Assembly: GCF_000143415.4 (NCBI RefSeq)
Contig: NW_003314361.1
Coordinates: forward strand, 1 to 64,000
Reading direction: 5' to 3'
DNA: 64,000 bases
From: Selaginella moellendorffii
Lineage: Eukaryota > Plantae > Lycopodiophyta
The notes under the pieces were generated by a model. It was not told where the DNA came from. It ran no database searches and saw nothing but the letters and a program-made list of their open reading frames with translations. This document shows, piece after piece, positions 1-22,391 of this stretch; the stretch's first letter is position 1, and each line of letters opens with the position of its first letter. A program made the translations under genes and the position numbers.

Positions 1-90
1 CCTAAACCCTAAACCCTAAACCCTAAACCTAAAACCCTAAACCCTAAACCCTAAACCCTAAACCCTAAACCCTAAACCCTAAACCCTAAA
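1..90 (+). repeat. Terminal plant-type telomeric array (CCCTAAA)n
   Basis: About 13 tandem CCCTAAA units with minor variants at the very start of the window. The C-rich strand is on +, so the chromosome end is to the left. Confidence 0.95.
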
Positions 91-708
91 CGGTCAGAAC
101 GGAATATTCCCCAATATTCCGACTGTATCCCTGTTGACCGAGTCAAAACGGCATATACTGTTGGATTCCGCTCTTCCTTCCGATCGTGAATATGTGAGTT
201 TCAACTCTGAACTCCACACACGACTCGTGGAAAAGCGTGTATTCCGTTAAAACGGTGCCGCTCCCTCGACATCGGCGACACATGCCGACAGCTCGCGGGA
301 TGGCTCTCCCCTGCATCACCGCTGGACTCCGGGTATGTATGAGTGACCTCAGGCCCTCCACCATCCCAGTCCACACACGGTCAACGCAGGGTCAACGGTC
401 AACGACGGAATATTCCCAGAATATTCCCTGCAAAGTGAACCACGTTTTTCGTCACCGGGTACGTACGAGTGACACAAGCATTGTGGACGTAACGCATGCA
501 TCATATCATGCCGCGTTTACAAGTTATCTTGCGTCAAAGGTACGTCACCCGCCGGCTGAACGCTTACTGTCTTCGGCGATCCGCCGAAGTCATTCTCCGC
601 GACTACCACTGCTGTGGAGTAACCAACACCAGCTGTGCTACGTTCGCACCCTCGCGAGCCAACGCTGCCACGCCACTTTGCATGGCCGCCACACGGACTT
701 GCGCCACA
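91..708 (+). mobile_element. 5'-truncated 3' UTR of a Penelope-like element (related subfamily), capped by telomere
   Basis: 638-706 is near-identical to 1984-2051, the end of the PLE 3' UTR. It shares GGAATATTCC and GGTCAAC motifs with 1890-1976 and is followed by the same hammerhead module. Confidence 0.6.
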
Positions 709-1010
709 TGACAGAGCCAAAATATAAGTAGAGTCGGCACCGAGCTAGGGTTAGGGTAGACACTAGACGACTACACCCGGCTGATGAGTCCCAAAAAGGA
801 CGAAACCGGTCTCGGGTTGTCTCTTGTCCTCTCCCTCGCTCACGAATGAATGAAAATTCATTCCCTTGCCTCCTCTACTTGCTCTCGATCATGCCGTCTC
901 GACAACGGCACACGGAGAATGTGGATTGCACAAAGTGGTGCCGCAATCTCGCCGGATTGCAACACCGCGGGGTGTCTTTGACCCTAAACGCCTAAACGCG
1001 CCTAAACCCT
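709..1010 (+). mobile_element. Hammerhead-containing PLE terminal module (pLTR-like) with empty 17-bp target site and telomere-like tail
   Basis: 709-959 is repeated at 2084-2334 (offset 1375). It ends in CAACACCGCGGGGTGTCTTTGACCCTAAACGCCTAAACGCGCCTAAA, which recurs at ~1332, ~4035 and ~6707. Confidence 0.8.
765..822 (+). ncRNA. Minimal type I hammerhead ribozyme (copy 1)
   Basis: Stem I ACCCGG(775-780)/TCGGGT(812-817), extended by AGACG/TGTCT; core CTGATGA 781-787; stem II GTCC-CAAAAA-GGAC; GAAA 802-805; palindromic stem III ACCGGT; GTC cleavage triplet 809-811. Confidence 0.93.
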
Positions 1011-1195
1011 AAACGCGCCTAAACCCTAAACCCTAAACCCTAAACCCTAAACCCTAAACCCTAAACCTAAACCCTAAACCCTAAACCCTAAACCCTAAAA
1101 CCCTAAACCTAAACCCTAAACCCTAAACCCTAAACCCTAAACCGGCTAAACCCTAAACCGGCTAAACCCTAAACCCTAAACCCTAAACCCTAAAC
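982..1195 (+). repeat. Interstitial telomeric repeats with variants (CGCCTAAA, CCGGCTAAA)
   Basis: Direct reading of the sequence. Confidence 0.95.
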
Positions 1196-1314
1196 CGGAC
1201 GGCCCAAGAGCAGCGCCGGGCGTTCGCGCTCATAGTTTCACTAGTCTCTTCGAGAGTGCGCTCTCAATGTTGTTTTGATCCCTTTGGGATTGGGGTAATG
1301 TACATATATGTTTA
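1196..1314 (+). mobile_element. 5'-truncated copy (3' 119 bp) of the non-coding element at 2335-4017
   Basis: Appears identical to 3899-4017 (offset 2703). Preceded by telomere repeats and followed by the 17-bp site (1315-1331) and the module tail. Confidence 0.9.
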
Positions 1315-1399
1315 GCGATCTCGCCAGATTGCAACACCACGGGGTGTCTTTGACCCTAAACGCCTAAACGCGCCTAAACCCTAAACCCTAAACCCTAAA

Positions 1400-2053
1400 C
1401 TTTCCACGGCCCATGGATTCCATGCCATGCGCATGCGGTTCTACCACCGCCTCTGTGTCCGGGGACACCCGATCTCCTTCCTCCAACACTGCCTCTCTAG
1501 CATCTCCTCTGACCAGCAACATGAAGCTCTCCTTGCACGCTCGCACCGCTCTAGCGACGCTTGTCGACGGACCCCCCTCGCCTTTAAGCTCCCCTACACG
1601 CTTCACAGCACGCAGCTAGGCTTGGGGGACATCCTAAACCCTAAACAGGTGATGGATGAAGCTCCCGCAGACACACTCCCCTGAGTGATCACGTGCTGGA
1701 GATGCCTCCCGAATCCCGGTTCGTTCCTGGTCAGGGCTAAACTCGCTTTGCGAGCTTAGCCACATCTTTTACTACGCTTTGCAAGAGACGGAAGCATATG
1801 ATTGCATCCTTCTCTGCGTAACCGATGACCTTCAGGGTCTGGCCGATGGACTCTAGGTATGTCCCAGTCACCTCTGGTCGTCCCCCACCGGTCAACGCCC
1901 GGTCAACGCGCAGTCTACTGTCCAAACAGGAATATTCCCGAATATTCCCTGACAGTCAGATTGTTGACCGAGTCAACGAGGCCTACGTTCGCACCCTCGC
2001 GAGCCAACGCTGCCACGCCAGTTCGCATGGCCGCCACACGGACTCGCGCCAGT
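1400..2053 (+). mobile_element. 3' end of an endonuclease-deficient Penelope-like retroelement (RT thumb/C-terminus 1400-1759 plus 3' UTR)
   Basis: The frame reads LSTAHGFHAMRMRFYHRLCVRGHPISFL...PLAFKLPY...P*VITCWRCLPNPGSFLVRAKLALRA*. This matches PLE C-terminal motifs FxxRLxxRGYP, LPY and RxxNLxxxLVRAKL. It stops at 1757-1759 with no GIY-YIG domain, has an internal TGA at 1682-1684, and its 5' end is capped by CCCTAAA. Confidence 0.75.
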
Positions 2054-2139
2054 CCTAAACCCTAAACCCTAAACCCTAAACCCTGACAGAGCCAAAATAT
2101 AAGTAGAGTCGGCACCGAGCTAGGGTTAGGGTAGACACT

Positions 2140-2197
2140 AGACGACTACACCCGGCTGATGAGTCCCAAAAAGGACGAAACCGGTCTCGGGTTGTCT
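2140..2197 (+). ncRNA. Minimal type I hammerhead ribozyme (copy 2)
   Basis: Identical to copy 1: CTGATGA 2156-2162, GAAA 2177-2180, predicted cleavage after C2186. Confidence 0.93.
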
Positions 2198-2334
2198 CTT
2201 GTCCTCTCCCTCGCTCACGAATGAATGAAAATTCATTCCCTCGCCTCCTCTACTTGCTCTCGATCACGCCGTTTCGACAACGGCACACGGAGAATGTGGA
2301 TTGCACAAAGTGGTGCCGCGATCTCGCCAGATTG

Positions 2335-4017
2335 TGCAAAAGCCCTAAGTTGTTTGAGGAGAGAGCTCGAAGGCGCTAGAGAGAGAGTGTGAGAAAGAGG
2401 GAGGGAGCGAGCGTCCAGGGCGGCACAAGCATCGCAGACCGCGGCAGCTACACACGGAGCTCGTCTCCCTCCTCTTTCTCCTCTTCTCTCTCGCTCTCTG
2501 TCGTTTTTATCGATATCTCCCAAACGGCTGGGAGAAACCTCGATTCCTTCGACGGGGGGCTTCTAGGAGTGTAGATTCTCATCCTCCTAGAAGGCCGCGG
2601 CGAGATCTGCCACGGATCTGGAGATCTCGCTGGCCCTAGGTCGCTGCTGTTTTTAGGGTTTTTCGGCGGCGGCTAGGGTTTTTCGGGGCTTAGAGATTTG
2701 GAGGAGTGGAGAGGGCAGTCAGGAACACCACGGCTGCAGCAGCTGGACGCTCTCCTCTCCTCCTCTTCTTTTTTCGCTTCTCATGGTTTCAAGTTTTTTG
2801 GGAGCTCATAACTCCTGAACGGCTTGGAATTTTTCCACAAAAATTCACAGGGGGATAGCTGGGAGGGAGCCTCACACCCTCCCAGAAGCGCAGGCAAAAA
2901 TTCTTCACGGTCTCAGAGTTCTCACCTGTCCTAATTCGTGGCTAGGGTTAGGGTTCTTGGCTAACTGCGGTTAGGGCAGGACTTAGGGTGGCGGCGGGAT
3001 CTTCGATCCGGCCACTCTAAGTGTCAGGGATCTTCGTTACATGTGGTTGGCACGGCAGCAACATGGTGGAAACGCGACGGTTGCTGGTCTCGCAGCTTCG
3101 AGCGGGATTTCTCGCCTTAGGTCGGGCCATGCAAGGTGGCGACTAAGGTACGGAGAGCGTGAAGCTGCATGTGTCGGAAGTTCTTGGCGACTTGAGTCGT
3201 GGAAACACGACCAAGTCATGGGATCTTTGTTGACTGGTGGAGGACAGTTCGGGACGACATCCCGACATAGCGAAGTGTCCGTGGTGGATGGACGTGGAAG
3301 ACACTATGGGCGCATTTTTGGATCTAGTGACAGGGAAGTGCTGTCACAAAGGGGGCCAGTGGCGGATGGCTGAGTTGGTTTGCTCGCGGAGGGGATCCCA
3401 CATGGTTCTTGCTTCAGGGCTAGTCCTTTGAGGAGGTTTGCGGAGGCTTGCAAGTCTTGTGATTGTCGCGATGCCGGCAACGGGGGCTCGTATATCATTG
3501 AAGGGGGCCAGCGCACTTGTCTAGTGTGGGAGGCAAGGTAGCACGCTCTAGTCTAGAGCTGGAGGAGGCTCACACCTCGCTTGTTCTACGCCTTGGAGTT
3601 TGTTCGTAATGGGCACCGACTTAGTGCTGGAAGTACACTGGGGAGGTAGGCGCTCCAAGACACAGCATCACGTCTTGGGGCGTAACAGGTGGCTTCAGCT
3701 TGTGCAGTGGAGTCACCTTGGAGGCGAGTGACCCATGAGCAACGCCGGGTCATCGTGCTCGAGTTGGACCGCTTGGCTGCGACGACGTTGAGCTAGATCG
3801 ACATGGTGTTCGTCTGGCTTGTCATCATTGTGACCGAGTGGAGGAGTGGCAAGGCGAAGCAGGTGGCTTCAAGCTCCGCGGTGGAGTCACCTGGGAGGCG
3901 GACGGCCCAAGAGCAGCGCCGGGCGTTCGCGCTCATAGTTTCACTAGTCTCTTCGAGAGTGCGCTCTCAATGTTGTTTTGATCCCTTTGGGATTGGGGTA
4001 ATGTACATATATGTTTA
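2335..4017 (+). mobile_element. Non-autonomous (SINE-like) 1683-bp retroelement with 17-bp TSD
   Basis: Flanked by GCGATCTCGCCAGATTG at 2318-2334 and 4018-4034, with an empty site at 943-959. No recognisable ORF. The 3' ~40 nt resembles the LINE 3' end (6653-6689). Confidence 0.85.
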
Positions 4018-4056
4018 GCGATCTCGCCAGATTGCAGCACCGCGGGGTGTCTTTGA

Positions 4057-4229
4057 CCCTAAACGCCTAAACGCGCCTAAATCCTAAAACCCTAAACCTT
4101 AACCCTAAACCCTAAACCCTAAAACCCTAAACCCTAAACCCTATAAACCCTAAACCCTAAACCCTAAACCCTAAAAACCCAAAACCCTAAACCCTAAACC
4201 CTAAAAACCCTAAACCCTAAACCCTAAAC
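4057..4229 (+). repeat. Interstitial telomeric repeats
   Basis: CCCTAAA and variant units. Confidence 0.95.
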
Positions 4230-6689
4230 TGGTGCTTTTGCGGACGACACTGCCTTGTTCCTACTTGCGACTAAGGAGAACATGGATGCAGCTAAGAAGG
4301 CGTTGGTGCAGCAATTAACTGGAACAAATTAGTGGGCATAAATTGGGGGCGACCAGGCATCGAATCTTGGGGGCAGGACATCGGCTTCCAGTGGCTCAAA
4401 CCAGGAGAAGACGCTAGGTACCTGGGGATCCAGGTTGGTACTCGGTTCAGTGCAGCACTTCAGGATGACACCTTGCTTCGACGGGTACGAACGTCAATCC
4501 AGAAGTGGGCTCCCCGGAAACTCGGCTTGCCAGCGAGAGTGGTAGTCGCTAGGAGCATCATTCTGCCCAGCATCTGGTACCACCTCTCCATCTGGCTTGT
4601 TCCAGAACGCACTCTTAGAAAGGTACGCACGATGGTCCGTCAGTATTTGTGGTGGGGCGCTCTGGTCACAGGGAGGAGCATGGCCAAGGTCGCGTGGCAA
4701 TCTATAGCACGTCCGTGAGTCTTGGGAGGACTTGGAGTAATCGATCCAAGTGACATGGCGAAGGCGCTACGGTACAAAATCCTCCTCATGGGCCTTCAAC
4801 CAGGTAATCAACCTTGGAGACTCATGTTTAGGCAGAACTTGTTGGCAATCCGGCCCAAGCACAACACTGCAAGACCGTGGGAAGAAGATCCACGTTGGCT
4901 CTTTGCCGAGGGGCCGAAGCAAGTAGTCAAGGGCAGCACTCTAGTCCAGGGGTTTCTCCGGTTATGGAGCGCGTTTCCAGTCAACAGGGAATTGCCAGGG
5001 CGAGCGGAGGACTGGCTGAACCAGCCCCTGTTCTTAAACGACCTCTTCAAACTGGATGATAGGACGCTGGGCAGGGAGGACCACTACACAATCTGGAGAA
5101 AGCTACATAGCACAGGCTTCCGAACTCTCAAGCAGCTGGTGCGGGTTCTGGACAAGGACAGGAGGAAGACTACGAGGCATATGCAGGTCTTTAACCCGGG
5201 ACGGTGGAGGAAAGTCCACCTTGATCTTCTTCGCATTATCAGAGCAGTGAGTGCGGCGAAGCAGGGGCAACTCTGGCCTAGGCGTTGTCTCAAATCTGGA
5301 GACTTTGTGGCTCTGCAACGGGACGTGGAGCCAGACAGGGAACGAGTTAGCTTGGGGGCCTGGACACGGGCATTTACGGCCCCAACACCAGCTTGGGAGG
5401 ACAGGGATGTGGAGGTATGGTTCGTTGTGTCTCCAGACCAAAATGTTGGGCGTCCTTTTCGAGTCTTGAGAGGTGACATGCTGTTGCCAGCAGGAGACGA
5501 ACAAGTCATGCCGATGGTGACGGATGACGAGGTCAAGGGTAGGATTCGAGTAATACGACAGGCTCCGAAACAATCGGTGGTGGTTCAATCGTTGGCTGCA
5601 CTAGAGGGGGAAGGCATTCTTAGATGGTGGCGACAGCAGCTCATCGAGGATCTGGATTGGGACCCCGCAGCATGGAAACGAGGAGCGAGGAGCTTCTTCT
5701 CCTTCGGCGTCAAGGAAGCAAGGGATGGTCTCTTGACCAGCAGGGAGGAGGCCCGAGGGGAGATCCCCAAGCTCTGGAAGAAATGGATCGAGCAAGGAGT
5801 TGAAACAAATCAGGTGGTGGGCAACACGCTTGCGTTCTGGAAACTACCGGTACAGGAGAAAGTCAAGGCCACCTCTTGGTTGGTGGCAAATAACGGGCTG
5901 CCGGTAGGACAGCGGTTCCAGGAAGAAGCATGCCGACGGTGCAAGGAGTGTGGCGAGCTGGAGACAGCGCGACATGTCCTATGGGAATGCGACGTGGCGA
6001 GAGAAGTTTGGCGACAGATCTTCAAGGCGACGCAGGAACTCGGAGACATTCCAGAGTTTGAGGCTCGGAGTGGGGATATCCTCCACTGGTTTGAGGGAGC
6101 TAGAGGCCCAGCCATTGGTCCAGCTTGGAGGCGTATTCGCTGCTACGGACGGCACCGATGGAACATGCGAGTCCGGTGGGACATGACAGGGGCTGAAGTT
6201 GGGATGTCCATCTGGGAGGCGTTGGGCCAAGAGCGCTGGTCCATTTGGAGGGCAACAGGACTGCAGGCACTTTGGGAGGCGCGGAACCACTGTCGCTTTG
6301 ATGGGCAACAAGCGAGAATATCGGCAGTGGTGGTATCATGGTGGAGACTCACTCTTGCAGCGGTGCGTCTTCACTACACCATCCTGAAAGAGCGGGCAAA
6401 ACCGAGGCAGCTCGAGGAGTGGAGATCTAGGTGGCTCCCATGCTTTGGCAAATTGGGAGGTGGCGAGATTCGTTGGCAATGGCGCCCCCTAGACTCTGTT
6501 CTAAGGTCAGCTCGTGGGGGAGACTTGGACATCGACATGATTCGCTCGAGACGACTACGTCCACTTCTACTCCAGGACTAGGTCTAGCTACGGCATATGA
6601 GGATCACGTAGAGTAGCTCATTGAGAGGGCGGCACGCCCATTTTTTGTATTAGTCCCATTGGGACATGGGGAATGTACATACACGTTCA
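4230..6689 (+). mobile_element. 5'-truncated, inactivated L1/Tx1-type LINE (ORF2: RT C-terminal half plus zf-RVT CCHC)
   Basis: Begins GAFADDTALF (FADD at 4237-4248), then a frameshifting deletion before GAAINWNK. Continues with RYLGI, KVAWQSIARP*VLGGLG (stop 4716-4718) and CKECGELETARHVLWEC, ending at stop 6581. The 108-nt 3' UTR has no poly(A) and abuts GCGATCTCGCCGGATTG at 6690. Confidence 0.92.
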
Positions 6690-6728
6690 GCGATCTCGCC
6701 GGATTGCAACACCGCAGGGTGTCTTTGA

Positions 6729-6770
6729 CCCTAAACGCCTAAACGCGCCTAAACCCTAAACCCTAAACCC
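6729..6770 (+). repeat. Innermost telomeric repeats; boundary of the terminal retroelement array
   Basis: CCCTAAACGCCTAAACGCGCCTAAACCCTAAACCCTAAACCC, followed by an abrupt switch to AT-rich DNA. Confidence 0.9.
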
Positions 6771-7439
6771 TTTTTTTAGTATATATTTTTAGTATATCAA
6801 AAAAATAGGTTAGTTTTTGGAAATTATAATTTTGATTGCATATTGAGGTAAACTGTTTTTATCTGATGCCTCTAACTTTCATAGTTTACTAAAGAATATT
6901 AGAATTTTTATTATGTGTCTGGTTTTACATTTAAAAATATACATTGTTGATACTTATATTTCAGAGAATATAAAAATCAATACTATCTAATTAGATATCA
7001 TATCAATATATAAAGAAAAATATATTAATATTTAATAAATGTTTCGAGTAATATAAATATAGTATGTTTTTACAACACAAATATACCAACTATTTATTAA
7101 AACATTTATCAAAGAAATATTTACAACTATGATTTATATTAATTTTAAGATGAATATTGTAGAAAACTCTTCTGGAATGACATATAGACTTTTTTGCTTT
7201 TTACCTAATACCTTTACGACAGAGAGTGAAACACTAAATAAAATCAAACACGGAAATCATTTCTATGTCCTGAGTTAATGTACAAATATCATGTACCAAA
7301 TCAAACCAAGCTCATGGCTTCAAAGTTGTGTCTATAAACACGTACATACACAACAGTTTATTTAATGCTGTCTTATTCCTTCAGAAATGGCTTTTTTTAA
7401 AACAGTTCATGGCTTTGTCTGTAAGAAAGTAGAGTAGGC

Positions 7440-8278: not shown

Positions 8279-8652
8279 NNNNNNNNNNNNNNNNNNNNNN
8301 NNNNNNNNNNNNNNNNNNNNNNNNNNNNNNNNNNNNNNNNNNNNNNNNNNNNNNNNNNNNNNNNNNNNNNNNNNNNNNNNNNNNNNNNNNNNNNNNNNNN
8401 NNNNNNNNNNNNNNNNNNNNNNNNNNNNNNNNNNNNNNNNNNNNNNNNNNNNNNNNNNNNNNNNNNNNNNNNNNNNNNNNNNNNNNNNNNNNNNNNNNNN
8501 NNNNNNNNNNNNNNNNNNNNNNNNNNNNNNNNNNNNNNNNNNNNNNNNNNNNNNNNNNNNNNNNNNNNNNNNNNNNNNNNNNNNNNNNNNNNNNNNNNNN
8601 NNNNNNNNNNNNNNNNNNNNNNNNNNNNNNNNNNNNNNNNNNNNNNNNNNNN
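8279..8652. other. Assembly gap (N)
   Basis: Run of N. Confidence 1.
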
Positions 8653-9440
8653 CACATGCAGCGTCTTTACGTGAAAGGTGAGGTATCCAACACTCATCTT
8701 TAAATTCTATCATATTCTTTGTTCTCAAATCGAGCTTTGATCTAACGTATTTGGTGCTGGTTGTGTACATTGATTGCTGCCATTAAGAAACTCAAAGGTG
8801 GAGATCCTCACCAAGACGACATGTCAATCTGGCCCAAGTCATTGGCAGCTACCGTGGAGAAGAGCGTGAACGAGACAGTGAAGGCAGGCACCAAACTTTT
8901 AGTTGGTGGTAAGCGAAGGGGAGCTTTCATGGAGCCAATGATCCTGGAAGACGCTCCCTTTGACACAGATGCAAAGAAGGAAGAGATTTTCAGTCCAGTG
9001 ATCCTTCTCTACTCATACAAGTAAGCTCTCAAAGTTTCTTAGCCCCTGAAGTTCTTCTTTACTTCCTTTTTTTTCTCTAAACTAAAACGGTGGTGACGCA
9101 GTGATTTCAAGGAAGCCGTGAAGGAAGCTAACAACACGCATTATGGTCTCCAGGCCAGCGTCTTTATGCATGATCTAAACAAGGCCTTCTATGCGTTTGA
9201 GCACATAGAGGTAGCTTTGCGTTTGAGATATAGAAAGTATTGATCGATTGTTTGATGATTATTTTATCCTCACAGGCTGGAGGAGTTTGCCTCAATGATT
9301 TGCCAAGCATGCGCGTTGATAGCCAGCCATACGGTGGGATCAAAGACTCTGGAATCCAACGAGAGGGTGTCAAGTACGTGATGGACGACATGCTTGAAAC
9401 CAAAGTTTTAGTCATGTGCAATGTAGGCAACGTTGCCATG
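8653..9440 (+). pseudogene. ALDH21A1: C-terminal half of an aldehyde dehydrogenase, ALDH21-like (partial, probably a pseudogene)
   Basis: Reads HMQRLYV; KEEIFSPV; intron 9021-9101; DFKEAVKEANNTHYGLQASVF; intron 9211-9275; RVDSQPYGGIKDSGIQREGVKY..MLETKVLVM, as I recall moss ALDH21. The N-terminal half is absent or in the gap, and conserved residues are altered (FGP to FSP). Confidence 0.75.
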
Positions 9441-10890: not shown

Positions 10891-11188
10891 CATCAAAGGT
10901 GTCATTATAAACCCTAGATGAACAGCATTGGCTGTGATGTCAACTCTTTTGGCCTAATCAGTGAAAGAGAAAGCATTGATGAAAGAGAAAGGTGGGAGAG
11001 ATTTCAAAGCATTAGACGAATACCTTGAATCTCATTGCCATCAAAGGTGTCATTATAAACCCTGGATGAACAGCGTTTGCTGTGATGTCAACTCCTTCGG
11101 CCTAATCAGCGAAAGAGAAAACATTGGCAAAAGAGAAAGGTGGGAGAGATTTCAAAGCATTAGATGAATACCTTGAATCTTATTGCCA
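10891..11188 (+). repeat. Tandem duplication, 2 x 148 bp
   Basis: CATCAAAGGTGTCATTATAAACCC starts at 10891 and 11039. Confidence 0.9.
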
Positions 11189-11248
11189 GTTCTTTGGCGT
11201 GGAAAAAGTTCGCGAGCTTGGATTGACTGTATGCTCTAGTGTCGGAGT

Positions 11249-11796
11249 ACCTTTTGGAAGAAAAAAGGAATAATGTAAGCTCACTACAAAAGAGAGTTGT
11301 TTGGCATACCAGGTTTTGTCATTAAGGTGTGAGAACTGGATTCCACCGCTGTAAGAGGCAATATGTGCAACGGAGGAGAGATTGAACCTTTTGGAAGAAA
11401 AAAGGAATAATGTAAGCTCACGACAAAAGAGAGTTCTTTGGTGTACCAGGTTTTGTCATTAAGGTGTGAGAACTGGATTCCACCGCTGTAAGAGGCGATA
11501 TGCGTGACGGAGGAGAGATTGAACCTTTTGGAAGAAAAAAGGAATAATGTAAGCTCACGACAAAAGAGAGTTCTTTGGCGTACCAGGTTTTGTCATTAAG
11601 GTGTGAGAACTGGATTCCACTGCTGTAAGAGGCGATATGCGCGACGGAGGAGAGATTGAACCTTTTGGAAGAAAAAAGGAATAATGTAAGCTCACGACAA
11701 AAGAGAGTTCTTTGGCGTACCAGGTTTTGTCATTAAGGTGTGAGAACTGGATTCCACCGCTGTAAGAGGTGATATGCGCAACAGAGGAGAGATTGA
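11249..11796 (+). repeat. Tandem repeat, 4 x 137 bp
   Basis: ACCTTTTGGAAGAAAAAAGG at 11249, 11386, 11523 and 11660; the whole unit is conserved, with no variable spacers. Confidence 0.95.
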
Positions 11797-13795: not shown

Positions 13796-16158
13796 CTACT
13801 CTACCTCTTCGTCACTACTTACCTTCTTCCACTTCTGCTTCTGTTCATCGCTACTTGAAGAGGTTTTCCGCATCAGCTTCTTCCTCTTCAGGTTCTCTTT
13901 GCTATCACATTTTGGTCTTGGCCTGCGCCGTGAGCGTAGCTGTGAGAAGGGCCCCTCAAGTATGGCACATGCAGCACACTGCCTCCCAGGACCGCCACAG
14001 TCCTTCATAACCCCTGCGTCCAATATTGACTTCACGATTCTCTCTTTAGTTCCAGTTACCCATATCCGATGCTTCCGCGCCTTCGCCTGCAGGAATGCCT
14101 TCTTGCATTTATCGACCCAGTTCAGCACCGCAGGGTCCATTTTAGACCGCCTCTCCTTCTTGGACTGCTTGCTCTTCTCCATGGCCTCTTTTCTCTTCTC
14201 TTCCAGCTCCTCTAGCAACTTGCAATCTTCTTCCGTGATACCATCGGCGAAGGACTCCAAGAAAGTCGAAGCATGCAGCTGATACTCCATAGCATCCGCC
14301 TCTTTGTCCACGGGGTTCAAATCAACCTTCGTCGGGCTGAAGAAGGCATAATGCACCCGAAGTTCGTCCTCGCTCACGTCCGGTACCCACATTTGAACGT
14401 ATGACTTCTTCACAAACTTCTGTTCTGACTTTCGATGGTTCTTGGGGTTCATGGTTATCTGCCCAGCGATTATATGGACGACGCCTTCAGACTTGAACAC
14501 CACCACGAAATCTGTGTACTTGAAGAAATAACTATCCGGAAGTAGTACAACTCCCTGACCGTCCCGAAAGCCCTTAGCCTGCACCTGCTTCGGCTCTGCT
14601 CCCTCAAAAGGGAGTTTGGTGAATTCTCTCGGAACCTTGAAGTCCCCTAGCTTCATGCCTTTCTTACAAATCACTTCACCGATAAAAGTTTCAATCAGCC
14701 AGCCGAGCTCAGCCCAGTTCATACCCCTCACATCTGCCAGCCTTTGACGTGCGTAAGCCATCAAGACTTTGTTCCGATAGGCTGTAGACGCCAAGCGCCT
14801 GTTAACCTCCTCCATATGGATTCTTGCGATAAAAGGGGTGCAGAACTCCGTCACCGCCGTAAACGCCGGGAAAAGAACAGGCAGTTCCGTATATGGTAAC
14901 TCCGGGTCCAAATTCGCCATGTTCCTGCGTATCGCTTTCTTTAAATCTTGAAATTCCGGATCCTGTTTGTAGCGCCTCACAAGCATCTTCCACTCCAACC
15001 TCTGCAGGACAGAACGTTAAGGCCCTAGTTACAATAATTCACACGGTGCACTTACATGGCAGTACTCCTCAATTAGCTGGTTGGAATCAGTAGCAGAAGG
15101 GCCAGTGGCAGGAGCAGCAGCAGCAGAAGAATCAGCGGCAGAAGGATCAGTGGTGGCAGAAGGATTGCGCCAGATATCGTATAGCTCGTCAAGTTCAATG
15201 TACTTTTTTCGAGCACCTGAGACGCAACCTGTCAGGCTGTTGCAGTGGTTAACAAGAATGGAAAGTGACAACGGGTGGCATGCACCAAGGTCCTCGACAT
15301 CACCCCAGTGCTCAGGATAGTTCTCAAGAAACTTGCCAAGAACAGTTCCCGACAGGTACGCATCACGCTCTGCCTGTTTGACGAAGATAGTTAGCAAACT
15401 CCAATCTGAAGGCATCACATTACCTTCGTGAACATCTTGCTGATATTATATACTGTGGGACTACCTTGAAACCGAGATTCTTTCAATGCTTCACTGTTGG
15501 GTGAAAGGGCCTTCACCACGACATGTGCTTGCCCCCAAAGTTCGTCTGTCCATTTCCTGGCTGCCTTGCGCTTCTCTGCATCACTTCCGGTCCTCAGATC
15601 ATGACGCTCTTCCCCATCATCAGTCAACAGGACGATCCTTTCGCCTAGCCGCCTCCGACTTTCCAGAAATGCCTTAGCATCTTCCGGTGTTTCCATGTAG
15701 GCTATGGCCTCCTCCGCGCCTTTCTCGTTGCAGAACGTGAACAGTAGCACGTCACGGACCTGTTCAGCAACGGGATGATCCACATCCAAGTACCAAATAC
15801 ACACTACTCTGGTGATAGGATATCCGGGTTGTGGCCGCTTGTTGAACTCATCGAAAACTTTTATAAGCTCCCAGGCGAAGGCTCTCAACATGCTGCTTTT
15901 CCCCCCTCCCTTGGTACCTGTCAATATGAAAACGCCCCCCATGCTATCGCTGAGTAAAGGTTTCACAGCAATCCTAAAACCGATGTACTCCTCCGTGCTG
16001 CAAAATGCGAACTCGCGAGGAGGCCTCTTGATCTTGCACGAATCCTCCAAGCCCGGGAACGGAAGAGAAACCTTGGAGCCTTGATTGCGCAACTCTGCAA
16101 CATCTACTTCACGGGCCCTCGCCACTCGCGCCTTCTTCACCTTGCTCTCAAGCTCCAT
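13796..16158 (-). CDS. Crinkler/RHS-like P-loop NTPase plus REase-fold protein, 3 exons (16158-15424, 15373-15056, 15001-13796), about 752 aa
   Basis: Walker A GTKGGGKS and Walker B IVLLTDD; C-terminal PDSYFFKYTDFVV...IAGQITMNPKNH fits the CR-REase pattern (P..F...D...QIT...H). GT-AG introns 15374-15423 and 15002-15055 join the three ORFs in frame. Confidence 0.7.
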
Positions 16159-16188: not shown

Positions 16189-18459
16189 ATATTTAAATTT
16201 AACCTAATAATAATCTTAAGTATGACTAACCAGACCGTTTTGGACGCCTATGCATGTGGCAAGCGATCAAAGACAAAGATGAAAGCAGAGCTCTTCTGTT
16301 TTCGCGGGTTTACCTCAGATTAATATAACCATAAGCCCTAGGAGACATTTTCCCGAAGGAGAGCCCACTTAAAGCACATGGGGGTCCGAAGCGGATTTTG
16401 GGCAGCTTGTTGTCAAGTTGTGTTAGACAAACTCACAGTCTCTTTCTAAAACCTCAATGGTAGAAACTTATAAAAGGTGGATAGCAACATGCAGAAGCTG
16501 CTGCAAAACATCTTGCTCATCATGACAACAGACCTCGTATAGGTCACAAGCAACTTAGAGACGAGGTCTGTTGTCATGATGAGCAGCCTCTTCACAATGT
16601 TGTAGAAACACTGCTGTATAATATTTCAGCTTTGATTATGCTTGGTAAAGCAAAAGAGTCCTATTTAGATATCTTTGAAACCAATGAGACATACTATTCA
16701 TTCTAAAAAGGTGCCAACTTCTTATAAAGCTTGCATTTTCTGCGACAATATGCAAATCCCAAGGACAAACACTCCTAAGGATAAACACTGCAAAAACATT
16801 CCTTCTAAGATTAATTGTCAGCCATAGTCCAGCTTTATGTTACGTTCTTGAAGGGAACATCAAAGAAATGAATTTTGATCTTTATAGAAGATGCAAAACA
16901 GAATCATTAACACAAAAAATATTGGCTACAAATAGAACTATATCACCAAACAACAGTTTTCCTATCTATTCCAGCAGAGCTAGATTCCTTGCTAGTTCTG
17001 TATTTATTCTACTCTGCCAGTTTCAATACTATTTTTGATCTACTTGCTGAACTACAGACGAGACCAAGGCTTAAACTGCATCCATGTTCATCCCTACTCT
17101 ACCTCTTCGTCACTACTTACCTTCTTCCACTTCTGCTTCTGTTCATCGCTACTTGAAGAGGTTTTCCGCATCAGCTTCTTCCTCTTCAGGTTCTCTTTGC
17201 TATCACATTTTGGTCTTGGCCTGCGCCGTGAGCGTAGCTGTGAGAAGGGCCCCTCAAGTATGGCACATGCAGCACACTGCCTCCCAGGACCGCCACAGTC
17301 CTCCATAACCCCTGCGTCCAATATTGACTTCACGATTCTCTCTTTAGTTCCAGTTATCCATATCTGATGCTTCCGCGCCTTCGCCTGCAGGAATGCCTTC
17401 TTGCATTTATCGACCCAGTTCAGCACCGCAGGGTCCATTTTAGACCGCCTCTCCTTCTTGGACTGCTTGCTCTTCTCCATGGCCTCTTTTCTCTTCTCTT
17501 CCAGCTCCTCTAGCAACTTGCAATCTTCTTCCGTGATACCATCGGCGAAGGACTCCAAGAAAGTCGAAGCATGCAGCTGATACTCCATAGCATCCGCCTC
17601 TTTGTCCACGTCCAGGTTCAAATCAACCTTCGTCGGGCTGAAGAAGGCATAATGCACCCGAAGTTCGTCCTCGCTCACGTCCGGTACCCACATTTGAACG
17701 TATGACTTCTTCACAAACTTCTGTTCTGACTTTCGATGGTTCTTGGGGTTCATGGTTATCTGCCCAGCGATTATATGGACGACGCCTTCAGACTTGAACA
17801 CCACCACGAAATCTGTGTACTTGAAGAAATAACTATCCGGAAGTAGTACAACTCCCTGACCGTCCCGAAAGCCCTTAGCCTGCACCTGCTTTGGCTCTGC
17901 TCCCTCAAAAGGGAGTTTGGTGAATTCTCTCAGAACCTTGAAGTCCCCTAGCTTCATGCCTTTCTTACAAATCACTTCACCGATAAAAGTTTCAATCAGC
18001 CAGCCGAGCTCAGCCCAGTTCATACCCCTCACATCTGCCAGCCTTTGACGTGCGTAAGCCGTCAAGACTTTGTTCCGATAGGCTGTAGATGCCAAGCGCC
18101 TGTTAACCTCCTCCATATGGATCCTTGCGATAAAAGGGGTGCAGAACTCCGTCACTGCCGTAAACGCTGGGAAAAGAACAGGCAGTTCCGTATATGGTAA
18201 CTCCGGGTCCAAATTCGCCATGTTCCTGCATATCGCTTTCTTTAAATCTTGAAATTCCGGATCCTGTTTGTAGTGCCTCACAAGCATCTTCCACTCCAAC
18301 TTCTGCAGGACAGAACGTTAAGACCCTAGTTACAATAATTCACACGGTGCACTTACATGGCAGTACTCCTCAATTAGCTGGTTGGAATCAGTAGCAGAAG
18401 GGCCAGTGGCAGGAGGAGCGGCAGCAGAAGAATCAGCAGCAGAAGGATCTGTGGTGGCA
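16189..18459 (-). pseudogene. Tandem duplicate of 12871-15157 (exon 3 and part of exon 2 of the CR-like gene), 5'-truncated
   Basis: Near-identical sequence; ORF 17094-18299 differs from 13796-14998 at about 10 residues. Homology stops at 18459, where a GC-rich unrelated sequence begins. Confidence 0.9.
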
Positions 18460-21700: not shown

Positions 21701-22391
21701 ACTTGAAGAATGCATTCCTTTTGGTAGCAATTCTCCTTCACACAACCGGTCAAGTTGCCTTCATTCTCCCAAATGACCCCCATTGGATGTCCTGCCTTAT
21801 GAGGTATGCAAGTCAAGTCAACTTCAAGAGGTTCTCTTCCGGGTGCATCATGGATAAAGGCGTTCGGGTTAAGACCNNNNNNNNNNNNNNNNNNNNNNNN
21901 NNNNNNNNNNNNNNNNNNNNNNNNNNNNNNNNNNNNNNNNNNNNNNNNNNNNNNNNNNNNNNNNNNNNNNNNNNNNGTAAGAAATCATCTTCTGTTTTGG
22001 TTGTCTCTAAATGTTTATTATTCAGGTTATGATGTGGACTTACCATGTGTTCTGCAGAAGAGAAAATGATAGTTTTCGTGATAGTGAGCGTGCTGCAAGG
22101 GTTTTGCCAGGGTATGATAGCTTTATTGACATCATACCAAATCTCGTAGATGACAACATCCGCAACACATTGTCTGGGTATCAGTTCTAATCTCCATTAG
22201 TGATGCATGTCCTACTTGAGCTTTATTGCCCAACTAGGGGTGTTATCATCGATTGCACAGTAGGTAGCGGTTCGATGGTCGAAGCAGCACGTGACTCTGG
22301 TAGATCGGTGTTTGCGATTGAAGAATATGAATTCTTCAAACGCCGTCTTAGAGGTTTTTGTCCTTCTCTATCAGTTGCTTCTAGAAGGTAA
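18781..22391 (+). pseudogene. Multi-exon gene: Pro-rich N-terminus, ParB-like domain, beta-class N4/N6 DNA methyltransferase-like C-terminus (decayed)
   Basis: FYIIDENHRWCAW (ParB DGxHR-like); FMLFDMPDG (motif IV-like) upstream of LLELYCPTRGVIIDCTVGSGSMVEAARDSGRSVFAIE (motif X-I of N6_N4_Mtase). Premature stops and an N gap at 21877-21976. Confidence 0.65.

What the first reader, a model, noticed from the sequence alone, without database searches (positions are those of the whole stretch)
1..6770. Polarised telomeric retro-array: insertions may hitch-hike to the chromosome end on the PLE 3' tail
Seen: all units face the same way (sense on the C-rich strand, 3' ends inward). The truncated 5' ends at 91, 1196, 1400 and 4230 abut CCCTAAA repeats. 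Four units end in the same tail, GGTGTCTTTGACCCTAAACGCCTAAACGCGCCTAAA, whose fixed variants look element-encoded rather than telomerase-made. Established: this polarity is what is expected when an RNA ending in CCCUAAA anneals to the G-overhang, is reverse-transcribed and is then capped by telomerase. Inference: because the LINE and its partner insert about 40 nt upstream of this tail, read-through RNAs could be copied onto chromosome ends by the PLE RT, giving mixed telomerase/retroelement end extension.
Basis: partly seen in the sequence, partly recalled or inferred. Interest (0 to 1): 0.8.

Follow-up and report, generated by a model that had tools for sequence, protein, structure and literature searches.

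The report
Spikemoss chromosome end built from retroelements
The end of a spikemoss chromosome is a one-way chain of cut-short retroelement copies alternating with telomere repeats, a pattern already published for this plant; a second jumping gene and its helper sit in the first element's tail, and whether they ride that tail to the chromosome end could not be decided here.

Summary
The window is bases 1-64000 of Selaginella moellendorffii scaffold GL377665.1. Bases 1-6770 hold telomere repeats and at least four co-oriented, 5'-truncated retro-units. Each ends in the same exact 36-nt telomere-like tail. Two units are non-coding 3' parts of a hammerhead-bearing Penelope-like element (PLE). A 1.7-kb non-coding partner sits in one PLE tail hairpin with a 16-17 bp target duplication. 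Two units consist only of the 3' part of the partner or of an L1-type LINE, plus the tail.

The polarised PLE/telomerase array is published for this species. This scan had already noted the LINE in the tail hairpin on other scaffolds.

The hitch-hike inference is plausible but not shown. In favour: the LINE has no poly(A) signal or tail, its last 25 nt mimic the PLE sequence it displaces, and the composite units have the same telomere-junction register as the PLE-only units. Two rivals predict the same structure: insertion followed by terminal erosion and healing, and abortive LINE integration that loses the distal piece.

I give hitch-hiking about 0.35-0.4.

The parts
1..91 (+). Terminal telomere tract, (CCCTAAA)n, C-rich strand 5'->3' from the scaffold end
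   Evidence: (13 copies, 95% matches); scaffold end shown
92..1006 (+). Unit A: 5'-truncated, non-coding 3' part of the hammerhead-bearing PLE, with an uninterrupted tail hairpin and tail
   Evidence: no Pfam hit in its ORFs; 638-959 matches 1983-2334; hairpin in MFE and centroid
775..817 (+). Type I hammerhead ribozyme of unit A
   Evidence: RF00163, 40.5 bits, E 7.8e-07
937..966 (+). Tail hairpin (outer stem GGTG/CACC, inner stem GCAATC/GATTGC); target of the LINE and partner, cut after GATTG at 959
   Evidence: fold; site and alignment
971..1006 (+). 36-nt telomere-like tail with fixed variant repeats, copy 1 of 4
1007..1195 (+). Telomere tract between units A and B; holds two CCGGCTAAA variant repeats at 1141-1167.
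1196..1378 (+). Unit B: last 120 nt of the non-coding partner, then the 16-nt target copy, the rest of the hairpin and the tail
   Evidence: (partner part 120/120 and target copy 16/16 identical to 3899-4034; two differences, both in the PLE-derived flank)
1379..1400 (+). Three-repeat telomere tract between units B and C
1401..2335 (+). Unit C, PLE part: 5'-truncated, with short internal telomere tracts at 1632-1646 and 2053-2084. 1983-2334 is collinear with unit A 638-959. Ends at the insertion point
2150..2192 (+). Type I hammerhead ribozyme of unit C
2336..4018 (+). Non-coding partner element, about 1.68 kb. Flanked by the duplicated target CGATCTCGCCAGATTG (2319-2334 and 4019-4034). Shares its last ~70 nt with the LINE
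   Evidence: 3973-4043 vs 6645-6715, 82%; no Pfam hit; no tRNA; no similarity to LINE coding sequence
4019..4081 (+). Unit C: 3' target copy, rest of the hairpin and tail copy 3
4082..4229 (+). Degenerate telomere tract between units C and D
   Evidence: 83% matches
4230..6690 (+). Unit D: L1-type LINE, 5'-truncated inside the RT catalytic motif (GAFADD). Decayed: one frameshift and stops near 4329 and 4716. zf-RVT domain present. No poly(A) tail or signal
   Evidence: PF13966, E 5.4e-09; 73% to P0001 RT
6691..6753 (+). Unit D: target copy, rest of the hairpin and tail copy 4
6754..6770 (+). Innermost telomere tract, about 2.5 repeats, joined directly to AT-rich unique DNA

Best explanation
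Core, about 0.9 likely. This is a real chromosome end of Selaginella moellendorffii. It grew outward by repeated rounds. In each round an RNA ending in the PLE's telomere-like tail anneals to the G-strand overhang and is reverse-transcribed only part of the way. Telomerase then caps the new DNA end. A site-specific L1-type LINE and a non-coding partner that shares its 3' end parasitise the PLE. They integrate by target-primed reverse transcription at one point in the tail hairpin and duplicate 16-17 bp.

The disputed step, about 0.35-0.4 likely and my first choice by a small margin. Units B and D hold only the 3' part of the partner or LINE plus the tail. I propose they were made by the same end-addition process, from RNAs transcribed across an occupied tail. 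The LINE has no terminator of its own, so its RNA would run on into the hairpin remnant and tail. That RNA carries the docking tail and can be copied onto an overhang.

Shown: the anatomy, the polarity, the fixed insertion site and the absence of a poly(A) tail. Inferred: the read-through RNA and its copying at the end. Which enzyme would do the copying, PLE RT or the LINE's own RT acting without its endonuclease, is unknown.
For: - Anatomy and polarity.
- Scaffold end.
- Published model and species: PMC8557442, PMC6431247, PMC12477314, PMC4209133.
- True insertion: 16-17 bp duplication around the partner in unit C, and identity to the PLE jumps from about 60% to about 97% exactly at the junction.
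- No AATAAA or ATTAAA and no A-run at the LINE or partner 3' end.
- With the alignment anchored at the junction, the last 25 nt of the LINE match the 25 nt of PLE that the insertion displaces at 16/25 (shuffle p < 5e-5). The partner matches at 13/25 (p 0.004). A read-through RNA therefore rebuilds a PLE-like 3' module.
- The fold keeps the inner target stem and the tail in such an RNA.
- The 5' junctions of B and D have the same telomere register as those of the PLE-only units A and C. Five of six junctions end in ...CCCTAAAC| whatever the next base is (chance about 0.002 by my arithmetic). This argues for one junction-forming process and against microhomology joining.
- Three of the four tails here are occupied, so occupied templates would be common.
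Against: - No RNA evidence.
- No other chromosome end or other copy of this LINE family could be fetched.
- Erosion plus healing, and abortive integration, predict exactly the same structure.
- B and C share an identical partner part and target copy but differ at 2 of 47 PLE-derived flank bases. They are therefore not copies of one master, or they changed later.
- The insertion removes the outer stem of the hairpin, which may be needed for docking or RT recognition.
- Earlier follow-ups on other scaffolds concluded that the LINE gets into arrays by targeting the hairpin (s1-385040, s1-339298), which needs no hitch-hiking.
Confidence: 0.38

Rival explanations
1. Insertion, then erosion and healing. 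A PLE unit was added at the end. The LINE or partner then integrated in its tail while that unit was terminal. The end later lost its telomere and eroded through the PLE body into the insert, and telomerase healed it.
For: It gives the same structure. The internal telomere tracts are very short, 17 to about 190 nt, so this end has repeatedly had critically short telomeres. The literature reads 5' truncations of telomeric LINEs as terminal erosion (PMC5537684, on the Giardia elements). The B and C flanks differ while the partner parts are identical, as expected for independent local insertions.
Against: It needs the insertion to happen in the short time a unit is terminal, plus kilobase-scale erosion, and this twice in four units. 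Healing of eroded ends usually uses microhomology (my own knowledge). Yet B and D share one fixed register, with no microhomology, with the PLE-only units.
Confidence: 0.28
2. Abortive integration. The LINE or partner started normal target-primed reverse transcription in a subterminal tail hairpin, but the 5' end of the cDNA was never joined to the upstream DNA. The distal piece, which holds only PLE and telomere sequence, was lost at no cost. Telomerase then capped the cDNA end.
For: It explains the fixed orientation, the variable 5' truncation and the direct telomere junction without any read-through RNA or PLE RT. Telomerase would act on a cDNA 3' end, as for PLE units, which fits the shared junction register. 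The element's endonuclease-type integration is shown by the target duplication in unit C. It also fits the differing B and C flanks.
Against: There is no direct evidence, and I know of no precedent for telomerase capping of an abortive LINE cDNA. It does not explain why the LINE 3' end mimics the displaced PLE sequence.
Confidence: 0.24
3. The LINE and partner own the tail. The hairpin and telomere-like tail are part of their own 3' ends, so they dock on telomeres by themselves.
For: Every LINE or partner copy here ends in the module. Their last 25 nt resemble PLE sequence.
Against: In unit C the PLE runs up to GATTG. The partner follows, and the same 16-17 nt recur after it, which is an integration footprint. 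Identity to the PLE jumps from about 60% to about 97% exactly at that point. An earlier follow-up reached the same conclusion on another scaffold (s1-339298).
Confidence: 0.04
4. Assembly artefact. The order of units was made up when a draft Sanger assembly collapsed or mis-joined repeats.
For: This is a draft scaffold with N gaps nearby, at 8279-8652 and 21877-21976. Units share identical stretches of up to about 180 nt.
Against: Each junction is unique sequence within the reach of one Sanger read. 20 runs from 7 studies hold parts of the stretch, and four of them hold half or more of its sampled words. Similar arrays were noted on several other scaffolds.
Confidence: 0.04

Closest known systems
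Endonuclease-deficient telomere-attaching PLEs (Athena, Coprina, Terminons), including those published for Selaginella moellendorffii (Gladyshev and Arkhipova 2007, as cited in PMC8557442, PMC12477314, PMC6431247)
   Same: Hammerhead motif in the 3' region. [quoted passage not shown] Head-to-tail chains of copies truncated at the 5' end by short telomere tracts. Secondary TE insertions, and foreign sequence between units, are recorded for Terminons.
   Different: The units here are non-coding 3' parts, and no RT is present in the window. The hammerhead lies about 155 nt upstream of the tail rather than next to it. A dedicated LINE and partner occupy the tail hairpin, which I did not find described in the papers held.
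Site-specific LINEs that are co-transcribed with their target and need downstream target sequence for precise priming (R2 and R1 in rDNA; from my own knowledge)
   Same: One fixed target site and orientation. No poly(A) tail. An RNA that probably continues into target sequence. A ribozyme upstream of the site in the host transcript.
   Different: The target is another retroelement's telomere-docking tail, not a host gene. The clade is L1-like with zf-RVT. Co-transcription is not shown here.
Telomeric LINE arrays with telomere repeats on 5'-truncated copies: Zepp in Chlorella, GilM/GilT in Giardia, TRAS/SART in Bombyx (listed in PMC10088271, PMC5537684), and endonuclease-independent L1 addition at uncapped mammalian telomeres (Morrish 2007, cited in PMC10088271)
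   Same: LINE copies in one orientation at chromosome ends. 5' truncations capped by telomere repeats. Precedent for a LINE RT extending a chromosome end without its endonuclease.
   Different: Those elements target telomere repeats or each other, or use their own 3' ends. Here the docking sequence would be borrowed from a PLE.
L1 3' transduction, and SINEs or HeT-A-type dependants that borrow another element's 3' end or RT (PMC6431247 for transduction; the rest from my own knowledge)
   Same: Read-through past a weak 3' end carries flanking sequence. A non-coding partner shares the LINE's 3' recognition end.
   Different: The transduced flank would itself be a functional telomere-docking module, which changes where the copy lands.

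Membership tests
Telomere-attaching endonuclease-deficient PLE (Athena/Coprina type) | Hammerhead ribozyme motif in the terminal repeat or 3' region | tested here: met
   RF00163 at 775-817 and 2150-2192, 40.5 bits against a gathering score of 34
Telomere-attaching endonuclease-deficient PLE (Athena/Coprina type) | 3' end carries reverse-complement telomeric repeats | tested here: met
   Identical 36-nt tail of variant CCCTAAA-type repeats at four unit ends
Telomere-attaching endonuclease-deficient PLE (Athena/Coprina type) | Co-oriented head-to-tail copies, truncated at the 5' end by short telomere tracts, at a chromosome end | tested here: met
   scaffold end shown
Telomere-attaching endonuclease-deficient PLE (Athena/Coprina type) | PLE-clade reverse transcriptase without a GIY-YIG endonuclease | tested here: inconclusive
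   No RT ORF lies in units A or C. Their ORFs have no Pfam hit. The units are 5'-truncated, so an autonomous parent cannot be excluded or shown.
L1-type site-specific LINE | LINE reverse transcriptase | tested here: met
   GAFADD motif at 4231-4248. 73% identity to the RVT_1 region of P0001. 69-70% identity over the C-terminal part.
L1-type site-specific LINE | C-terminal zf-RVT domain of plant L1-type elements | tested here: met
   PF13966, E 5.4e-09, 37 bits against a cut-off of 27.5
L1-type site-specific LINE | Apurinic-type endonuclease domain | not testable with these tools
   The copy is 5'-truncated inside the RT. The only relative found (L001) is also 5'-truncated.
L1-type site-specific LINE | Target-site duplication at a fixed site | tested here: met
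   A 16-17 bp duplication flanks the partner in unit C. The same 3' junction is seen in B, C and D. The LINE's own 5' junction is not available.
L1-type site-specific LINE | Poly(A) tail | tested here: not met
   No A-run and no AATAAA or ATTAAA at the 3' end
LINE-dependent non-autonomous partner (shared 3' end) | 3' end shared with the autonomous LINE | tested here: met
   3973-4043 against 6645-6715 at 82%. A small stem-loop is kept through changes on both sides: GTCCC/GGGAC in the LINE, ATCCC/GGGAT in the partner.
LINE-dependent non-autonomous partner (shared 3' end) | No coding capacity | tested here: met
   ORFs are at most 110 aa, with no Pfam hit. No translated similarity to the LINE beyond the 3' end.
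LINE-dependent non-autonomous partner (shared 3' end) | tRNA-, 7SL- or 5S-derived head (classical SINE) | tested here: not met
   No tRNA. No Rfam hit of that kind.
Hitch-hiking by read-through (3' transduction of the docking tail) | Transcripts that cross from the LINE or partner into the tail and end there | not testable with these tools
No listed run is on record as RNA.
Hitch-hiking by read-through (3' transduction of the docking tail) | Composite units at several ends with the same element and flank variants but different truncation points | tested here: inconclusive
   Only B and C can be compared. The partner and target copy are identical, and the flank differs at 2 of 47 bases. Other ends could not be fetched.

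The most novel reading that the evidence does not exclude
A three-party chromosome end. A LINE and its non-coding partner live in the docking tail of a telomere-attaching PLE. Their terminator-less RNAs therefore carry that tail and are copied straight onto G-overhangs without an endonuclease. The end would then be extended by telomerase, by a PLE and by a parasite of the PLE. The LINE's 3' end would have evolved to rebuild the PLE module that it interrupts.
Probability: 0.35. Interest if true: 0.65.

Novelty: new variant of a known kind. Interest (0 to 1): 0.45.

Why it matters
Telomere-attaching PLEs are discussed as relatives or forerunners of telomerase. Selaginella is the plant example named in the reviews I read (PMC12477314). 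If a LINE can borrow the PLE's docking tail, telomere targeting would be a transferable RNA module rather than a property of one enzyme. That bears on how Drosophila-type LINE telomeres could arise. Even without hitch-hiking, a LINE and partner specialised on another retroelement's 3' hairpin is a clear case of a parasite of a parasite at chromosome ends. The fixed junction register also gives a handle on how plant telomerase starts on non-telomeric 3' ends.

Tried and rejected
- Reads. No read or RNA evidence was obtained. I did not send those places to any tool again. (Rfam, 1197-6760 by reference) did cover other telomere tracts of the window.
- Other copies of the LINE. The search for homologous proteins with the 619-aa ORF and with P0001:300-739, and the exhaustive representative search, gave only P0001. 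Its locus L001 is a 68%-identical, internal relative truncated at the 3' end. It has no PLE tail and no upstream endonuclease ORF, so it is not informative.
- Allelic scaffold. The nearest annotated ORF family (P0095 cluster) lies only on this scaffold, so no haplotype comparison was possible. The 131-aa aldehyde dehydrogenase model 2 kb from the array is spliced.
- A metagenome scan for the hairpin-to-tail 27-mer found no match.
- Earlier-findings look-ups by sequence and by erosion/healing words were blank.
- Gladyshev and Arkhipova 2007, the Terminon paper, and the Zepp and Giardia papers are not held. They are cited only through papers that cite them.
- Rejected readings. The LINE owning the tail is rejected because of the integration footprint. 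Joining of a truncated LINE to upstream telomere repeats by microhomology after a target deletion is rejected because of the fixed register shared with PLE-only units. A recent local duplication of C giving B is made unlikely by two flank differences.


Full report
**Where this is.** A protein from an ORF at 13.8 kb led to NCBI record GL377665.1 of Selaginella moellendorffii assembly GCA_000143415.2. The fetched locus, record bases 7094-28747, is identical base for base to window 7094-28747. Window position 1 is therefore the scaffold end. Earlier notes of this scan had named the species, and I confirmed it this way. The scaffold is a draft with N gaps at 8279-8652 and 21877-21976.

**What is there.**
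- Bases 1-91 are 13 (CCCTAAA) repeats.
- Unit A (92-1006) is a non-coding piece with a type I hammerhead at 775-817, several hairpins and the 36-nt tail.
- A telomere tract runs to 1195.
- Unit B (1196-1378) is the last 120 nt of a non-coding element, followed by 16 nt of target copy, the rest of a hairpin and the tail.
- Three repeats follow.
- Unit C (1401-4081) is PLE sequence whose part 1983-2334 is collinear with A 638-959, with a hammerhead at 2150-2192.
  - It is interrupted after GATTG (2334) by a 1.68-kb non-coding partner (2336-4018).
  - The partner is flanked by the duplicated 16-17 nt CGATCTCGCCAGATTG.
  - The rest of the hairpin and the tail follow.
- A degenerate telomere tract runs to 4229.
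- Unit D (4230-6753) is an L1-type LINE.
  - It starts inside the RT motif GAFADD, continues with 73% identity to the RT of P0001, and carries zf-RVT.
  - It has one frameshift and two stops.
  - It is followed by the same target copy, hairpin remnant and tail.
- About 2.5 repeats join D to AT-rich unique DNA at 6771.
- The tail 36-mer is exact in all four copies and absent from shuffles.
- Everything faces the same way.

The insertion point is 11 nt before the quoted 36-mer and 47 nt before its end. Unit C also has internal telomere tracts at 1632-1646 and 2053-2084.

[quoted passage not shown] Selaginella moellendorffii is the plant example (PMC12477314), and its PLEs carry canonical type I hammerheads (PMC4209133). 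The polarised array and its reading are therefore already published. This scan had also found such arrays, and the LINE in the tail hairpin, on other scaffolds (s1-434245, s1-385040, s1-339298).

**The LINE and partner.**
- The integration footprint in unit C shows that the tail belongs to the PLE and that the insert is a true integration. Identity to the PLE also jumps from about 60% to about 97% at the junction.
- The partner has no ORF with a Pfam hit, no tRNA and no translated similarity to the LINE.
- The partner shares the LINE's last ~70 nt at 82%. This stretch includes a small stem-loop kept through changes on both sides. The partner is therefore a non-autonomous dependant of the LINE.
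- Neither element has a poly(A) signal or an A-run.
- With the alignment anchored at the junction, the LINE's last 25 nt match the 25 nt of PLE that the insertion displaces at 16/25 (shuffle p < 5e-5). The partner matches at 13/25 (p 0.004).
- An RNA that runs from the LINE into the tail would therefore rebuild a PLE-like 3' module. Folding keeps the inner target stem and the tail.
- I read this as an indirect sign that read-through RNAs matter to this LINE, much as downstream rDNA sequence matters to R1 and R2 (my own knowledge).

**Hitch-hiking or not.** Units B and D have LINE or partner sequence running straight into telomere repeats at their 5' ends. Three mechanisms give this.
1. A read-through RNA is copied onto the overhang and the copy stops early.
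2. The insert lands in a terminal PLE, the end then erodes into the insert and is healed.
3. Integration starts normally but the cDNA is never joined upstream. The distal piece is lost and telomerase caps the cDNA.

The structure alone cannot separate them. The following points bear on the choice.
- The junction register is the same at A, B, C, D and the tract at 1646|1647. Each ends in ...CCCTAAAC| before G, C, T, T or A. The chance is about 0.002 by my arithmetic (31/7^5). One process therefore made the 5' junctions of PLE-only and composite units, and it did not use microhomology. This argues against ordinary joining after a target deletion, and mildly against healing of randomly eroded ends. 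The two junctions that differ (2084|2085 and the innermost 6770|6771) do fit alignment on a terminal A.
- B and C have identical partner parts (120/120) and target copies (16/16), but differ at two bases of the 47-nt PLE-derived flank. The chance that both differences fall in the flank is about 0.07. They look like independent integrations into different tails, either here or at source loci.
- Three of the four tails here are occupied. If the published end-addition model holds and occupied units are transcribed, composite additions are an expected by-product, unless loss of the hairpin's outer stem blocks them.

I put hitch-hiking at 0.35-0.4, erosion plus healing near 0.28, and abortive integration near 0.24. 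Nothing here identifies the RT.

**What could not be done.**
There is therefore no check of the assembly order and no RNA evidence. Those places were not sent to any tool again.
- 20 runs from 7 studies hold parts of the stretch, but none is on record as RNA.
- No further copy of this LINE family or of the array could be fetched.

**Verdict.** This is a real, well-formed example of a published kind of chromosome end. It carries a less ordinary LINE-plus-partner parasite of the PLE tail, which this scan had already seen on other scaffolds. The hitch-hike idea is reasonable and testable, but open.

Noticed in passing
window 91|92, 1195|1196, 1400|1401, 1646|1647, 4229|4230 (and 2084|2085, 6770|6771): Five of six unit 5' junctions have the telomere tract ending in the same register (...CCCTAAAC|) whatever the element's first base is. 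On the G strand this reads as cDNA end, then G, then TTTAGGG. It suggests a fixed default start of telomerase on non-telomeric 3' ends, or one untemplated G added by the RT. The two other junctions fit alignment on a terminal A.
   Followed up: partly
window 2053-2084 compared with 702-709: A 4.4-repeat telomere tract splits PLE sequence that is continuous in unit A, replacing only about 4 nt. Either reverse transcription paused, telomerase added repeats and copying resumed on the same template, or a master copy already carried the tract. A second short tract at 1632-1646 has no uninterrupted copy to compare with.
   Followed up: partly
window 6666-6690 and 3994-4018 compared with 919-943: The last 25 nt of the LINE and of its partner resemble the PLE sequence just upstream of the duplicated target (16/25 and 13/25, anchored, shuffle p < 5e-5 and 0.004). 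The insert therefore partly rebuilds the module it interrupts.
   Followed up: yes
window 960-970, 1332-1342, 4035-4045, 6707-6717: Each of the three occupied tails has one private substitution within the 11 nt between the insertion point and the 36-mer, while the 36-mer is invariant in all four copies (3/33 against 0/108, about p 0.01 by my arithmetic). This may be repair synthesis next to the top-strand cut, or simply a less constrained stretch.
   Followed up: no
window 1141-1167: Two CCGGCTAAA variant repeats lie in the tract just distal to unit B. They echo the CCGG at B's truncated 5' end (1195-1198).
   Followed up: no
window 1379-1400 and 6754-6770 compared with 1007-1195 and 4082-4229: The two composite units (B, D) sit on very short proximal telomere tracts (22 and 17 nt). 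The two PLE-type units (A, C) sit on tracts of about 190 and 148 nt. With n = 4 this is not significant.
   Followed up: no
window 1-91, 981-1196, 4056-4229: Telomere tract purity falls inward (95%, 88%, 83% matches in Tandem Repeats Finder). This fits older tracts lying further inside.
   Followed up: no
window 2365-2505: A long inverted repeat lies in the 5' part of the partner. It draws only sub-threshold miRNA-precursor matches (MIR156, 29.5 bits against a gathering score of 62).
   Followed up: no
window 745-758, 2120-2133, 2659-2692, 2941-2990: G-strand-type telomere-like motifs (telo-box-like) lie on the sense strand, upstream of the PLE hammerhead and in the partner's 5' region. That is the opposite sense to the array's telomere tracts. 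They were read by eye and not searched.
   Followed up: no
window 13796-14998 and 17094-18299; 8878-9416; 10891-11796: A tandemly duplicated gene for a roughly 400-aa protein of unknown function (98% identity to SELMODRAFT_428231, no Pfam domain on record). A short aldehyde dehydrogenase gene model lies 2 kb from the array, next to an N gap. Tandem repeats of 148 and 137 bp are also present.
   Followed up: partly
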